This document shows, in pieces, positions 21,314-31,045 of a DNA stretch of 64,000 nt. The stretch is from Macrostomum lignano (lineage: Eukaryota): positions 186,001-250,000 of the forward strand of contig NIVC01000131.1 of NCBI GenBank assembly GCA_002269645.1, in the 5' to 3' direction. Position 1 is the first letter of the stretch, and every line of letters starts with the position of its first letter. The notes under the pieces are model-generated. The model did no database searches, had not been told where the DNA came from, and worked only from the letters and a program-made list of their open reading frames with translations. The translations under genes and the position numbers were made by a program.

Positions 21314-24300
21314 CAGCCAATCAAATGCGTGAGCTACATGAAACCAGCGAGGGAGAGACTTTCACGTATCAAAACTGGTTTAACCCACAGAAATGTCGGC
21401 CAGGAACGGAGAGCGTTGGCTCGCTGTGCTGCAGGCCGTGTGCCAAAGGCTACGGCATGATCACCAAGTGCTACAGGGATGAGGCTACGGGCAAATTCCA
21501 CGACACCGAATGCGTTCCGTGCAGCTCCGGTCAGATGCGCACATTCAGCGCCGCAGTTAGCGCGCTGTACAACTGCGAAAAATGCCGACCATGCAACCGG
21601 CCGTCCGAGAGGCTGGTGTCCGAGTGCACCGCCGAGCGGGACACCATCTGCCCATGCGCCGACGGCTATTACCGGTTGCGCGGCGGTGACTGCGCGCCCT
21701 GCGCCAGCTGCCCGATTGGCCAGGGCCTCGCGGACCCAGCCAGCTGCAACGGCAGTCGGGTGGCCGACTGCGCGCCCTGCCCAGCTGGAAGCTTCTCGGC
21801 GCCCCTAGCCGGCCTGCCCAACAGAATCTGCCGGCTCTGCGCTACCGCCTGTCCACCCGGTTACCAGCTACTGCCCGAAACCTGCCAGCGACCATCCGGA
21901 CCTGTCTGCCGCTCTGAAGCCAGCGGTCTCCTTGCTAGTAAGCTATCGGAGCTTTTTGATTGGCTGATGGGACTGTTGGGGGTAGAAAGAGAGCCTCCTC
22001 GCTACATAGTAAGCTATCGGAGCTTTTTGATTGGCTGATGGGACTGTTGGGGGTAGAAAGAGAGCCTCCTCGCTACATAGTAAGCTATCTGAGCTTTTTG
22101 ATTGGCTGATGGGGGATAGAAAGAGAGCCTCCTTTAGTAAACTATCGGAGCAAGTAATCGTAGCCCTCAACAGGGGAGGAAAAAAGGATAGAATTTTTTT
22201 TGAAAAATAAATATAAATGCAAAACGCCTGACATAGTCACTACTTAGACTACTTAGTTTCTTAGAGATTGAGACGTTTAAAGCAGAAATGCATCCAGATC
22301 GATAAATAAGCGAAATTCTATTCTTCTCACACTACTGAAGTCAGTAGCATGCTAAGGACATCGTTAAACCAGATAAATCGTAGATAGCAGAAGCTATCTA
22401 TGAAGAGAAGAGATTTCCAGCCCGTTCAGCCGTTTTTGCACCGGCCCCAGCTCATTGGCTGGCTCGGTTTCATCCAAAAGCAACTGCACTGCGCTGGAGG
22501 CCGCCTTTTATAAGTTCGAATTCGAAATTACCTTCTCTTCGGCGTTAAAAAAACCTGCGCAGCTCGGCTTTGAACGCAGACTAGCTGCACCGAATTCATT
22601 CGAACATTGGGAGTGCAGCCAGGGTGGGAAAAAGCCTGTTGCCGTTTGGATCCAGGCTGCTAAGCATGGCGCCGACCACTTCTCCAGATGCCACGGAGCT
22701 GTCGCCGGGTGCCGTCACTGCTGACTCTGTATTTCGGGACCTGCAGCAGCAGCAGCAGCAGCAGCCGGCTGAAGAAGATTCATTTCTTCGCAAGCAGCAA
22801 AAGCAGCCGCAGAGCAGGCCGCTGTCCGACTGGAAAGAGCTCATCGACAATGGCAACCCTAGGCCACCCATTAACTTGGCTCGCTTCAACCTCACCCAGG
22901 TGGCCCGGACTGAAGGTGAGGGAGCGACTGGTGTTTGTGGCTCTTGCCTCTTCTGTGACTTTGCCAGTTTCTCAATGATTTTGTGTTCTTACTGTCCAAA
23001 TGGGGCACTGCCTCATGGGATACTGTCCTCATGGGATACTGTCCTCATGGGATACTGTCCTCATGGGATACTGTCCTCATGGGATACTGTCCTCATGGGA
23101 TACTGTCCTCATGGGATACTGTCCTCATGGGATACTGTCCTCATGGGATACTGTCCTCATGGGATACTGTTCTCATGGGATACTGTTCTCATGGGATACT
23201 GTTCTCATGGGATACTGTCCTCATGGGATACTGTTCTCAGGGGATACTGTTCTCATGGGATACTGTCCTCATGGGATACTGTTCTCAGGGGATACTGTCC
23301 TCATGGGATACTGTCCTCATGGGATACTGTTCTCATGGGATACTGTTCTCATGGGATACTGTTCTCATGGGATACTGTCCTCATGGGATACTGTTCTCAG
23401 GGATACTGTTCTCATGGGATACTGTCCTCATGGGATACTGTTCTCAGGGGATACTGTTCTCATGGGATACTGTCCTCATGGGATACTGTCCTCATGGGAT
23501 ACTGTCCTCATGGGATACTGTCCTCATGGGATACTGTCCTCATGGGATACTGTCCTCATGGGATACTGTCCTCATGGGATACTGTCCTCATGGGATACTG
23601 TTCTCATGGGATACTGTTCTCATGGGATACTGTTCTCATGGGATACTGTCCTCATGGGATACTGTTCTCAGGGGATACTGTTCTCATGGGATACTGTCCT
23701 CATGGGATACTGTTCTCAGGGGATACTGTTCTCATGGGATACTGTCCTCATGGGATACTGTCCTCATGGGATACTGTCCTCATGGGATACTGTCCTCATG
23801 GGATACTGTCCTCATGGGATACTGTCCTCATGGGATACTGTCCTCATGGGATACTGTCCTCATGGGATACTGTCCTCATGGGATACTGTCCTCATGGGAT
23901 ACTGTCCTCATGGGATACTGTCCTCATGGGATACTGTCCTCATGGGATACTGTCCTCATGGGATACTGTCCTCATGGGATACTGTCCTCATGGGATACTG
24001 TCCTCATGGGATACTGTCCTCATGGGATACTGTTCTCATGGGATACTGTCCTCAGATTCGCACTTTGGTCAGTGGCACTAAGCGGATATTGCGGCTTGAG
24101 GATTACCTTCTTCAGTTTCCCCAAAAAATCGCCATCAGTCCTTAGTTAGTAACCGAATACTATGCATAAACTCTGTGCTGCTAGAAAATCATTATAAGTC
24201 ACACCTTAAAAAATAGAATTTTATATTTTATTCGCACAGTCCAAGCCGAACCGCAAGAAGAAGATATACCCCGGCATTGTTAGTTTATTATATCGCGAAA

Positions 24301-30300: not shown

Positions 30301-31045
30301 GGCAACGGAACTGGGTGAGACTGGGATCCTTCATCTGGGAGGGTACTATAGAACCGGATTACTGAAAGGATTTGGAAGGATAGAACCGGATTACTGAAAG
30401 GATCTGGAAGGATAGAACCGGATTACTGAAAGGATCTGGAAGGATAGAAGCAGATTACTAAAAGAATCTGGAAGGATAGAAGCAGATTACTAAAAGAATC
30501 TGGAAGGATAGAAGCAGATTACTGAAAGGATCTGGAAGGATAGAAGCAGATTACTGAAAGGATCTGGAAGGGTAGAAGCAGATTACTAAAAAAGATTTGT
30601 GGACACAATTGCTTACCAAAATAAAAACCCGCAGTTATACCGAAAGAAAACTACCAAGCTTGCTACTATCAGTAGAGTCGGCTATAAGTAGTAAAATATT
30701 TCTGAAAACCAAAAAAATTTTTTCGCAGGCTTCTCAGCCGATGATGTGCAGGAGTTCGAGGCCCAAGCCGACACCCTTCGCCAGAGCCCCATCCGGCTGA
30801 TGCTGCGCACCTGGTCGCAGCGTCCCGGCGCCACCATCGGCCTGTTTGGTCGCTGCTTACAGAAGGCCGGTCGAAAGGACGCGCTGATCCTATTCAAGGA
30901 GCTGGCCGAGAGGCAGCATCAGCAGCAGCATCAGCAGCAGCATGGCGCAGGCAGGCGGCAGAGCGCGCAGCCAAGACAAACTGGACAGCAGCAGCAGCAG
31001 CAGCTGGCAGAGGAGCCCAGCCTGCAAGAGATGTGCCAGGTGTAA
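21314..31045 (+). CDS. NGFR: p75NTR/NGFR (TNFRSF16)-like receptor: 4 TNFR Cys-rich domains, stalk, TM helix, death domain; 5' end not resolved
   Basis: Exons 21314-21937, 22688-22915, 29916-30314 and 30729-31045, all joined by phase-1 GT-AG introns into one open frame (~522 aa plus leader). [26 protein letters not shown] aligns ungapped with vertebrate p75 NLIPVYCSILAAVVVGLVAYIAFK. Death domain [10 protein letters not shown]...[19 protein letters not shown]...GRKDA. Orthology inferred from remembered sequence, not from a search. Confidence 0.85.
21938..22150. repeat. 71-bp tandem repeat that begins with the splice donor GTAAGC
   Basis: GTAAGC at 21938, 22009 and 22080; degenerate copy at 22137. 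Confidence 0.85.
23012..24052. repeat. 16-bp intronic minisatellite (TCATGGGATACTGTYC)
   Basis: Tandem units. Confidence 0.95.
24407..24459. repeat. (GA)n microsatellite
   Basis: Read directly. Confidence 0.95.
24800..25440. repeat. 30-bp minisatellite (TTCATGGTGGTTTCTGAGGCCGCCAGTCCA), two sub-families
   Basis: Tandem units. Confidence 0.9.
26170..27040. repeat. Polypurine ~21-bp minisatellite (GAGAGGGGAGAGAGGGGAAGT)
   Basis: Read directly. Confidence 0.9.
27655..28035. repeat. (TCTG)n microsatellite
   Basis: Read directly. Confidence 0.97.
28490..28880. repeat. Degenerate 14-bp repeat (ATTCTAAAATTGGG)
   Basis: Tandem units. Confidence 0.85.
29270..29790. repeat. 34-bp minisatellite (GATATTGCCATTCCCGGTGCCATTTTGTGCCACC)
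   Basis: Tandem units. Confidence 0.9.
30325..30590. repeat. 32-bp minisatellite filling the intron that splits the death domain
   Basis: GATCTGGAAGGATAGAAGCAGATTACTGAAAG-type units between donor 30315 and acceptor 30728. Confidence 0.9.

What the first reader, a model, noticed from the sequence alone, without database searches (positions are those of the whole stretch)
21314..31045. Complete p75 neurotrophin-receptor-like architecture in an invertebrate, probably a flatworm
Seen: four TNFR Cys-rich repeats in one exon, a stalk, a TM helix aligning ungapped with vertebrate p75NTR, a juxtamembrane DSG motif (SVDSGFGGS versus HSDSGISVDS) and a p75-type death domain. The helix keeps IPVYC and small-xxx-small (AIIVS versus AVVVG). 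Established: the TM Cys (rat Cys257) forms the disulfide-linked p75 dimer, and p75-like genes are reported in some protostomes but not Drosophila or C. elegans. Inference: a neurotrophin/p75 death-signalling module is retained in this lineage, relevant to regeneration and apoptosis if the host is Macrostomum. Unusual additions are polyQ tracts in the stalk and a Q/H-rich C-terminal tail. I do not know whether this gene is already annotated.
Basis: partly seen in the sequence, partly recalled or inferred. Interest (0 to 1): 0.7.

Follow-up and report, generated by a model that had tools for sequence, protein, structure and literature searches.

The report
Known flatworm p75-like TNF receptor gene
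This is a real, intact gene of the flatworm Macrostomum lignano for a cell-surface "death receptor" built like the vertebrate p75 neurotrophin receptor, but it is already in the databases and was described in a 2020 paper, and nothing here shows that it binds neurotrophins.

Summary
The gene encodes four TNFR cysteine-rich repeats (24 Cys) in one exon, a stalk with a Q7 tract, and a transmembrane helix. That helix aligns without gaps to the p75NTR and NRADD helices and keeps IPVYC. There is also a juxtamembrane DSG motif, a death domain split by an intron, and a Q/H-rich tail.

The host is Macrostomum lignano. A five-exon GT-AG model gives 513 aa. This product is identical to GenBank PAA89918.1 (BOX15_Mlig018038g1), which UniProt names "TNF receptor superfamily member 16". 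Bertevello et al. 2020 published it as the M. lignano TNFR, "remarkably similar to NGFR", with a conserved death domain.

The best hits outside Macrostomum, among 1.84 billion proteins, are all TNFRSF16/p75-like proteins. The p75 signal comes from the TM and intracellular parts. The ectodomain alone scores equally well against other TNFRs and is net basic (+4, versus -24 for rat p75).

M. lignano has TNF ligands, and cnidarians, which have no neurotrophins, have p75-like receptors. The "neurotrophin module retained" inference is therefore unsupported.

New details: the annotated N-terminus has no signal peptide, and a candidate signal-peptide exon lies at 8004-8069. M. lignano also has p75-type paralogues without cysteine-rich repeats.

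The parts
8004..8069 (+). Candidate alternative first coding exon for a signal peptide (MWPTGVLLLILLPGLCAGGLTR). Hypothetical and not in the database model.
   Evidence: This is the strongest of four candidates from a scan for an ATG, a hydrophobic stretch and a donor in window 1-21391 (Kyte-Doolittle 3.41, donor AGG|GTAACT). Two others lie in the intron 1 minisatellite, and the one at 850-928 is only weakly hydrophobic (2.11). The exon ends in phase 0, which fits the phase-0 acceptor at 21391. It sits in a unique island between two minisatellite arrays, with a TATAAG about 120 nt upstream. The resulting 518-aa product is not in the protein collection. No transcript or homeologue evidence could be obtained.
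18506..18556 (+). Annotated exon 1 (MPRVRAALVKPADGQPQ). It holds the start codon of the database protein and has no signal-peptide character.
   Evidence: Exon 1 is part of the spliced product that equals PAA89918.1. The donor is CAG|GTAAGA. It is 51/51 identical in the homeologous locus L001, where the surrounding introns are about 92-94% identical. The maximum 8-residue hydropathy is 0.73.
21391..21937 (+). Exon 2: all four TNFR cysteine-rich domains (residues 18-200; 24 Cys).
   Evidence: Pfam TNFR_c6. The 24 Cys align column for column with the invertebrate TNFRSF16-like proteins, and rat p75 also has 24 Cys. A repeat-region HMM scores E 4.6e-34. The acceptor is cccacag|AAATGT and the donor is GCTA|GTAAGC.
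22688..22915 (+). Exon 3: extracellular stalk with a Q7 tract (22744-22764) and the WKELIDNGN motif (22831-22857).
   Evidence: Splice sites and phase are consistent. The stalk is much longer than in all aligned relatives. The WKELIDNG motif is shared with the M. lignano paralogues P0003 and P0014.
29916..30314 (+). Exon 4: TM helix (29951-30025; Cys293 codon at 29966-29968), juxtamembrane region with [12 protein letters not shown] (30146-30181), and the N-terminal part of the death domain.
   Evidence: PF18422 is above its cut-off. The alignment to the p75 TM and NRADD is ungapped. P290 and C293 are invariant in A1.
30729..31045 (+). Exon 5: C-terminal part of the death domain, the Q/H-rich tail (30911-31042), the C-terminal ...CQV, and the stop codon TAA (31043-31045).
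   Evidence: The Pfam Death match spans the exon 4/5 junction (residues 387-463, 48.1 bits). The intron sits at the same model position in the homeologue L001 and in the paralogue loci L002 and L003. Most aligned relatives also end in V, I or L.

Best explanation
The locus is the already annotated M. lignano gene BOX15_Mlig018038g1. Database coordinates place it on scaf131, and the window corresponds to about 186,001-250,000 of that scaffold. It encodes a type I receptor of the TNF-receptor superfamily.

Shown:
- The gene has five GT-AG exons and encodes 513 aa.
- The domain order is four cysteine-rich repeats, a long stalk, a p75-type TM helix with the conserved Cys, a DSG-containing juxtamembrane segment, a death domain and a low-complexity tail.
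- It belongs to the invertebrate TNFRSF16-like group.
- Exons are more conserved than introns between the two genomic copies.

Inferred mechanism:
- The receptor sits in the membrane as a dimer linked through Cys293, as rat p75NTR is through Cys257.
- Ligand binding to the repeat cluster rearranges the dimer.
- The death domain is then freed to recruit death-domain adaptors that control apoptosis or NF-kB/JNK-type outputs.

The ligand is unknown. I consider endogenous TNF-superfamily ligands the most likely partners and a neurotrophin-like factor less likely.

The database N-terminus lacks a signal peptide. The true 5' exon is therefore probably different, and 8004-8069 is a candidate.
For: Identity and annotation:
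- The spliced product is identical over 513 aa to PAA89918.1 / UniProt A0A267GV70.
- Its first 360 aa are identical to the sequence printed in the supplement of PMC7519573.

Domains.

p75-type TM.

Family placement. Published BLASTp against all human TNFRs gives NGFR 4.8e-20, CD40 2e-10 and TNFR1 1e-9.

Selection: exons are 98.3-100% identical to the homeologue, against about 92-94% for introns.

TNF ligands: M. lignano has about ten TNF homologues, and the paper reports one type of repeat-bearing TNFR per flatworm.

The p75-like layout predates neurotrophins: Nematostella has a TNFRSF16-named relative, neurotrophins and Trk are reported only in bilaterians, and the PITA model makes this layout ancestral.
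Against: - No expression, binding or dimerisation data exist for this protein.
- The database model has no signal peptide.
- A covalent dimer does not fit simply with a trimeric TNF ligand.
- The death domain alone is closest to the MyD88 death domain.
- Whether M. lignano has neurotrophin-like or Trk genes could not be tested here, so a neurotrophin-type ligand is not excluded.
- The published Bayesian tree joins flatworm TNFRs to the NGFR branch with only low support.
Confidence: 0.78

Rival explanations
1. One reading: the protein is a true neurotrophin receptor, and a neurotrophin/p75 (possibly Trk) death-signalling module is retained in flatworms.
For: All three p75-defining modules are present. 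The closest relatives are proteins named p75/TNFRSF16-like, from phyla in which neurotrophin, Trk and p75 co-occur. Nothing in the data rules out a divergent neurotrophin in M. lignano.
Against: - No neurotrophin or Trk from any flatworm appears in the searchable literature.
- The ectodomain is not p75-specific by score.
- The ectodomain is net +4, against -24 for rat p75. From general knowledge, the acidic p75 surface complements basic neurotrophins.
- Cnidarians have p75-like receptors but no neurotrophins.
- M. lignano has TNF ligands that need a receptor.
Confidence: 0.12
2. The copy in the window is a non-functional or mis-modelled duplicate. It has no signal peptide, lies in a repeat-laden locus, and is one of many copies in a duplicated genome. 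The protein would therefore not reach the membrane as a receptor.
For: The annotated N-terminus is not a signal peptide, whereas the aligned relatives that carry the repeats start with a hydrophobic N-terminus. The paper lists matches on 15 scaffolds. The homeologous copy L001 has a 1-nt deletion in exon 4, and its database models are truncated.
Against: - In the window copy all five exons are open, in phase and GT-AG.
- All 24 Cys and the conserved TM and death-domain residues are kept.
- Exons are clearly more conserved than introns.
- A good signal-peptide exon candidate exists upstream.
Confidence: 0.06

Closest known systems
Vertebrate p75NTR (TNFRSF16 / NGFR)
   Same: Both have four A1-B2-type cysteine-rich repeats with 24 Cys and a single TM helix with IPVYC and a small-x3-small motif. 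The TM alignment is ungapped. Both have a juxtamembrane DSG motif and a C-terminal death domain, and both end in a C-terminal valine. NGFR is the best human BLASTp hit.
   Different: - The ectodomain is net basic rather than strongly acidic.
- The ectodomain is not closer to p75 than to other TNFRs.
- The stalk is far longer and has a polyQ tract.
- There is a 44-aa Q/H-rich tail between the death domain and the C-terminus.
- The C-terminus is CQV rather than SPV.
- All four repeats lie in one exon.
- The annotated model has no signal peptide.
- Ligand and Trk partnership are unknown.
Invertebrate TNFRSF16-like / 'PITA'-type receptors (e.g. the Saccoglossus p75NTR-like protein, and the Lingula, Crassostrea, Mytilus, Patella, Limulus and Priapulus TNFRSF16-like proteins)
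   Same: The domain order is the same and identity is 24-29% over the full length. P290 and C293 are invariant. The DSG motif, the death-domain core (W401, L404, A405, R457, D459) and a hydrophobic C-terminal residue are shared. These are the top hits in the 1.84-billion-protein search.
   Different: M. lignano has lineage-specific insertions in the stalk, the juxtamembrane region and the tail. It has DSGF rather than DSGV. It lacks an annotated signal peptide.
Platyhelminth TNFRs (SmTNFR of Schistosoma mansoni and relatives; Bertevello et al. 2020)
   Same: They form the same gene family. The M. lignano entry in that paper is this very gene. It has four repeats, a p75-type TM and similarity to NGFR. 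A Schistosoma relative also appears among my hits.
   Different: M. lignano keeps a well-conserved death domain. In most parasitic species the death domain is weak or undetectable.
NRADD / NRH2 (p75 paralogue lacking the cysteine-rich repeats)
   Same: It is the best single PDB hit for the TM plus death-domain region. The TM motif IPVYC and the DSGV motif are shared.
   Different: The window gene has a full four-repeat ectodomain. The NRADD-like layout is instead seen in other M. lignano genes, P0014/Mlig015487 and P0003/Mlig025712.

Membership tests
p75NTR / TNFRSF16-like (PITA-type) receptors | Ectodomain of four TNFR cysteine-rich domains (24 Cys) | tested here: met
   There are 24 Cys in exon 2. 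They align column for column with the invertebrate relatives, and rat p75 also has 24. Pfam TNFR_c6 scores 38.8 bits.
p75NTR / TNFRSF16-like (PITA-type) receptors | p75-type transmembrane domain with the conserved Cys (PF18422; rat Cys257) | tested here: met
   PF18422 scores 29.5-31.3 bits against a cut-off of 25.6. The only significant PDB hits are the p75 TM and NRADD, in an ungapped alignment. P290 and C293 are invariant in the alignment.
p75NTR / TNFRSF16-like (PITA-type) receptors | C-terminal intracellular death domain | tested here: met
   Pfam Death scores 48.1 bits, E 1.3e-12, over residues 387-463. The published table predicts six helices.
p75NTR / TNFRSF16-like (PITA-type) receptors | Death domain specifically closest to the p75/NRADD death domain | tested here: inconclusive
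   The single sequence scores 31 bits with MyD88, 23.8 with p75, 23.8 with TNFR1 and 22.5 with NRADD. The family profile scores 71 bits with p75, 53 with MyD88 and 51 with NRADD.
p75NTR / TNFRSF16-like (PITA-type) receptors | Closest relatives over the full length are p75/TNFRSF16-like proteins, in both search directions | tested here: met
   Forward search: all named top hits outside Macrostomum are TNFRSF16, NGFR or p75-like. Family profile against the PDB: the p75 ectodomain scores 150 bits against 107 for the next TNFR. Published BLASTp: NGFR is the best human TNFR.
p75NTR / TNFRSF16-like (PITA-type) receptors | Ectodomain alone closer to p75 than to other TNFRs | tested here: not met
   Against the PDB, TNFR1 scores 34 bits, CD40 31.7 and p75 29.5. 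Among the 150 relatives, fish TNFR1A, viral TNFR-like proteins and a gastropod multi-repeat protein score as well as or better than the TNFRSF16-like proteins.
p75NTR / TNFRSF16-like (PITA-type) receptors | Cleavable N-terminal signal peptide | tested here: inconclusive
   The annotated N-terminus, MPRVRAALVKPADGQPQ, is not hydrophobic. The relatives that carry the repeats have a hydrophobic N-terminus. A candidate exon at 8004-8069 would supply one, but it is unverified.
p75NTR / TNFRSF16-like (PITA-type) receptors | Conserved juxtamembrane DSG motif | tested here: met
   The M. lignano motif is [15 protein letters not shown], usually as DSGV or DSGI, is present in most of the aligned invertebrate relatives. 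A vertebrate NRADD-like protein has it too. The human p75 'HSDSGISVDS' is from memory only.
Functional neurotrophin receptor (p75NTR in the strict sense) | Binds neurotrophins or pro-neurotrophins | not testable with these tools
   There are no binding data. Indirect indication: the repeat cluster is net +4, against -24 for rat p75.
Functional neurotrophin receptor (p75NTR in the strict sense) | Neurotrophin, Trk and sortilin genes co-occur in the same genome | not testable with these tools
   The M. lignano genome and proteome cannot be searched by profile here. No paper in the library reports neurotrophin or Trk in flatworms.
NRADD / NRH2 | p75-type TM plus death domain with a short ectodomain lacking cysteine-rich repeats | tested here: not met
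   The window gene has four repeats. The layout is met instead by the paralogues P0014 (locus L003) and probably P0003 (locus L002).

The most novel reading that the evidence does not exclude
Flatworms have a working neurotrophin-type axis. In this reading, the receptor binds a still unrecognised cystine-knot, neurotrophin-like ligand rather than, or as well as, the TNF homologues. It would act together with the repeat-less p75-type paralogues, as p75 acts with NRADD/NRH2 in vertebrates. M. lignano would then be a regenerating, RNAi-tractable model for p75-type signalling outside the phyla where it is documented.
Probability: 0.1. Interest if true: 0.65.

Novelty: already known. Interest (0 to 1): 0.2.

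Why it matters
As it stands the finding is ordinary. The gene is annotated, named TNFRSF16 by UniProt, and published as the M. lignano TNFR with a conserved death domain.

It is still a useful gene. M. lignano is one of the few flatworms that has both this receptor with an intact death domain and endogenous TNF ligands, and it is experimentally tractable. It could therefore show what a p75-like "ancestral-type" TNFR binds and how it signals.

This check adds three small points:
- The database model lacks a signal peptide, and a candidate exon lies 13 kb upstream.
- The p75 likeness resides in the TM and intracellular half, not in the ligand-binding half.
- M. lignano also has NRADD-like paralogues that searches based on the cysteine-rich repeats would miss.

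Tried and rejected
1. The acceptor at 21314 and the implied stalk acceptor at 22619 are in frame. The database protein uses 21391 and 22688 instead. The acceptor at 21314 would also need a phase-1 upstream exon, and the annotated exon 1 ends in phase 0.

2. The ORF at 27092-27382 with a second polyQ, as a stalk exon. With the AG at 27107-08 and the GT at 27241-42, checked by eye, it would be a 2-2 phase exon between phase-1 junctions. It is absent from PAA89918.1 and from P0001. Only an old, frameshift-ridden prediction (P0002) reads through it. I did not enumerate all possible splice sites.

3. A search with the candidate signal peptide plus the ectodomain returned no hit at all, not even the gene's own database entry. 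That says nothing about the exon. It cost one of the three searches.

4. The spliced protein could not be submitted to the representative search or to the contig look-up. I used the 93%-identical homeologue P0001 instead. P0001 itself was not on record for contigs.

5. The homeologous locus L001 starts at the equivalent of window position about 13,150. It could not test conservation of the 8004-8069 exon.

6. Literature searches for neurotrophin or Trk in Macrostomum, planarians or flatworms found nothing relevant. The gene id appears in no main text. The supplements of the eLife 2020 paper give no per-flatworm data.

7. P0036 was tested as a possible vertebrate p75 and is not one.

8. Rfam found nothing in the window.

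9. I did not run a structure prediction or a new phylogeny. The allowed inputs were too few for a good model. The published Bayesian tree already shows that the repeat region resolves poorly.
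Full report
What is there. The region is eukaryotic DNA in which short unique islands are separated by long minisatellite arrays. Pfam finds TNFR_c6 in the ORF at 21178-22038 and the p75-specific transmembrane family TNFR_16_TM in the ORF at 29804-30397. It finds a death-domain half in the ORF at 30746-31045. With canonical GT-AG sites and matching phases, I built a five-exon model: 18506-18556, 21391-21937, 22688-22915, 29916-30314 and 30729-31045. 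It translates to 513 aa. On the spliced product the Death domain scores 48.1 bits (E 1.3e-12), TNFR_c6 38.8 bits and TNFR_16_TM 29.5 bits against a cut-off of 25.6.

Whose gene it is. The first protein search returned only Macrostomum lignano proteins, the best at 93% identity. An exact look-up shows that the 513-aa product is GenBank PAA89918.1, "hypothetical protein BOX15_Mlig018038g1". It is also UniProt A0A267GV70, which is named "Tumor necrosis factor receptor superfamily member 16". The same sequence is printed in the supplement of Bertevello et al. 2020 (Parasit Vectors 13:491, PMC7519573). Its first 360 residues are identical to my model. The exon coordinates listed there (scaf131:204506-216910) place the window at about 186,001-250,000 of that scaffold.

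[quoted passage not shown] Its BLASTp against all human TNFRs gives NGFR 4.8e-20, CD40 2e-10 and TNFR1 1e-9. It also reports about ten TNF-ligand homologues in M. lignano.

Checking the specific observations.
- The ectodomain exon holds 24 Cys, in register with the repeat-bearing relatives in alignment A1. Rat p75 also has 24.
- Against all PDB sequences, the TM/juxtamembrane segment significantly matches only p75NTR TM peptides and NRADD. The alignment is a 34-residue ungapped one that keeps IPVYC and puts A298-x3-S302 over the p75 A-x3-G.
- The DSG motif ([12 protein letters not shown]) falls in a column where most aligned invertebrate relatives have DSG, usually followed by V or I. A vertebrate NRADD-like protein has HCDSGVFLD at that place.
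- The stalk Q7 tract and the 44-aa Q/H-rich tail are real. The alignment shows they are lineage-specific insertions.
- Most aligned relatives, like M. lignano (…CQV), end in V, I or L.

Corrections.
- The gene begins at 18506 or earlier.
- The second polyQ ORF (27092-27382) is intronic.
- The death domain alone is not specifically p75-like. It scores 31 bits with MyD88, against about 24 with p75 and TNFR1.

Family placement. I ran phmmer with the homeologue P0001 against 1.84 billion representative proteins. It gave 154 hits at E <= 1e-3.
- The best hits outside Macrostomum score E 8e-23 to about 1e-16. Every one I looked up is named TNFRSF16, NGFR or p75-like. They come from Patella, Mytilus, Crassostrea, Pinctada, Tubulanus, Saccoglossus, Anneissia, Limulus, Lingula, Priapulus, Acanthaster and Diadema.
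- A profile of M. lignano plus these proteins hits the p75NTR ectodomain at 150 bits. The next TNFR ectodomains score 107 bits (OPG) and 100 bits or less.
- The same profile hits NRADD TM plus death domain at 107 bits, and the p75 death domain at 71 bits ahead of MyD88 at 53.

Membership in the p75-like (PITA-type) group is therefore well supported.

Where the p75 signal lies. It lies in the TM and intracellular half.
- The M. lignano ectodomain alone scores 34 bits with TNFR1, 32 with CD40 and 29.5 with p75.
- Among the 150 relatives, its best ectodomain matches include fish TNFR1A, iridovirus TNFR-like proteins and a gastropod multi-repeat protein. These score at or above the level of the TNFRSF16-like proteins.
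- The repeat cluster is net +4. Rat p75 is -24, and most invertebrate relatives lie between -2 and -15.

What this means for function. The p75-like layout does not by itself indicate neurotrophin signalling.
- Nematostella has a TNFRSF16-named relative.
- Neurotrophins and Trk are reported only in bilaterians (PMC7535936).
- A preprint argues that this layout is ancestral for the whole TNFR superfamily (10.1101/2021.12.26.474206).
- M. lignano has TNF ligands and, by repeat-based searches, only this receptor type.

I therefore favour a death receptor for endogenous TNF-family ligands. By analogy with p75 it would signal as a Cys293-linked dimer through its death domain. The dimer, the ligand and the outputs are inferences. 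I could not test for neurotrophin, Trk or sortilin genes in M. lignano, and the literature available here is silent on them.

Is the gene functional? The homeologous locus L001 (NIVC01004259.1) is colinear with the window from about 13,150 onwards. Its exons are 98.3-100% identical to the window and its introns about 92-94%. That pattern fits purifying selection. L001 has a 1-nt deletion in exon 4, and its database models are truncated. The window copy is intact.

One anomaly remains. The relatives that carry the repeats begin with a hydrophobic N-terminus, but the annotated M. lignano N-terminus (MPRVRAALVKPADGQPQ) is not one. I scanned the upstream 21 kb for an ATG, a hydrophobic stretch and a donor. 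The strongest of the four candidates lies at 8004-8069 (MWPTGVLLLILLPGLCAGGLTR, donor AGG|GTAACT). It ends in phase 0 and so fits the acceptor at 21391. It sits in a unique island with a TATAAG about 120 nt upstream. I could not verify it.

Related loci. M. lignano has further genes with a p75-type TM and a death domain but no cysteine-rich repeats.
- P0014 (Mlig015487g1-3, 282 aa) ends in …TTV. Its locus L003 has a POU-homeobox gene only 2 kb upstream on the same strand, and no repeat-coding ORF anywhere in 24.9 kb.
- P0003 (Mlig025712g2, 364 aa) has no repeat-coding ORF within 18 kb upstream of its TM exon.
- Both share the stalk motif WKELIDNG (DWKVLIDNG in P0014) and the death-domain intron position with the window gene.

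They look like lineage-specific, NRADD-like derivatives. The 2020 survey searched for the cysteine-rich repeats and would not have found them.

Verdict. The gene is already known. The neurotrophin inference is not supported by what can be tested here.

Noticed in passing
window 8004-8069 (+): Signal-peptide-like short ORF (MWPTGVLLLILLPGLCAGGLTR) that ends at a GT donor in phase 0. It lies in a unique island between two minisatellite arrays. It could be the missing leader exon of the receptor gene, 13.3 kb upstream of the repeat exon.
   Followed up: partly
L003 10001-14887 (NIVC01002132.1) and L002 10001-21406 (NIVC01000667.1): M. lignano paralogues (Mlig015487, Mlig025712) have a p75-type TM (LIPLYC / LLPVYC) and a death domain. 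Mlig025712 also has [12 protein letters not shown]. They share the stalk motif WKELIDNG (DWKVLIDNG in Mlig015487) with the window gene. No cysteine-rich repeats are detectable in the locus. This is an NRADD-like layout, not covered by the published survey, which searched for the repeats.
   Followed up: partly
L001 3902-18338 (NIVC01004259.1): Homeologous copy of the whole gene. It is about 92-94% identical in introns and 98-100% in exons. It has a 1-nt deletion in exon 4 and one fewer Gln in the stalk. Its database models (Mlig009773g1/g2) are truncated.
   Followed up: partly
window 21936-22113: The donor site of the repeat exon lies inside a 71-bp unit repeated 2.5 times. This creates two further copies of the GTAAGC donor downstream, at about 22009 and 22080. 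Using either copy would shift the frame.
   Followed up: no
window 22666-22668: An in-frame ATG ([13 protein letters not shown]…) lies just upstream of the stalk acceptor. It is used as the start of the database models of the homeologous copies (P0171, P0172). It could reflect an internal promoter that gives an isoform without the repeats, or it could be an annotation artefact.
   Followed up: no
window 27092-27640: A unique, non-repeat island inside the 7-kb intron 3 holds an open frame with a Q7 tract. An older gene prediction (P0002) read through it as coding. With the splice sites I checked by eye, it is out of phase with the flanking exons.
   Followed up: partly
window 1-20400, 22990-29790, 31128-40700: The density of long minisatellite arrays is very high. 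Periods run from 4 to 105 bp and arrays reach 1.8 kb. They fill the introns and intergenic DNA and create many long spurious ORFs.
   Followed up: partly
window 42303-51770 (-): Neighbouring genes on the minus strand: a CPSF73-type endonuclease (beta-lactamase/Beta-Casp/RMMBL/CPSF73 C-terminal exons at 48029-51770), a PPPDE (Peptidase_C97) exon at 46333-46719, and a DUF1294 membrane protein ORF at 42303-42821.
   Followed up: partly
window 52000-64000: GC content drops to 33-39%, from 45-58% in the rest of the window. There is no ORF of 110 aa or more and no Rfam match. The cause was not examined.
   Followed up: no
window 21391-21937 (ectodomain): A word-indexed protein search with the ectodomain returned no hit, although identical database entries exist. 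Negative results from that tool for Cys-rich queries should not be trusted.
   Followed up: no
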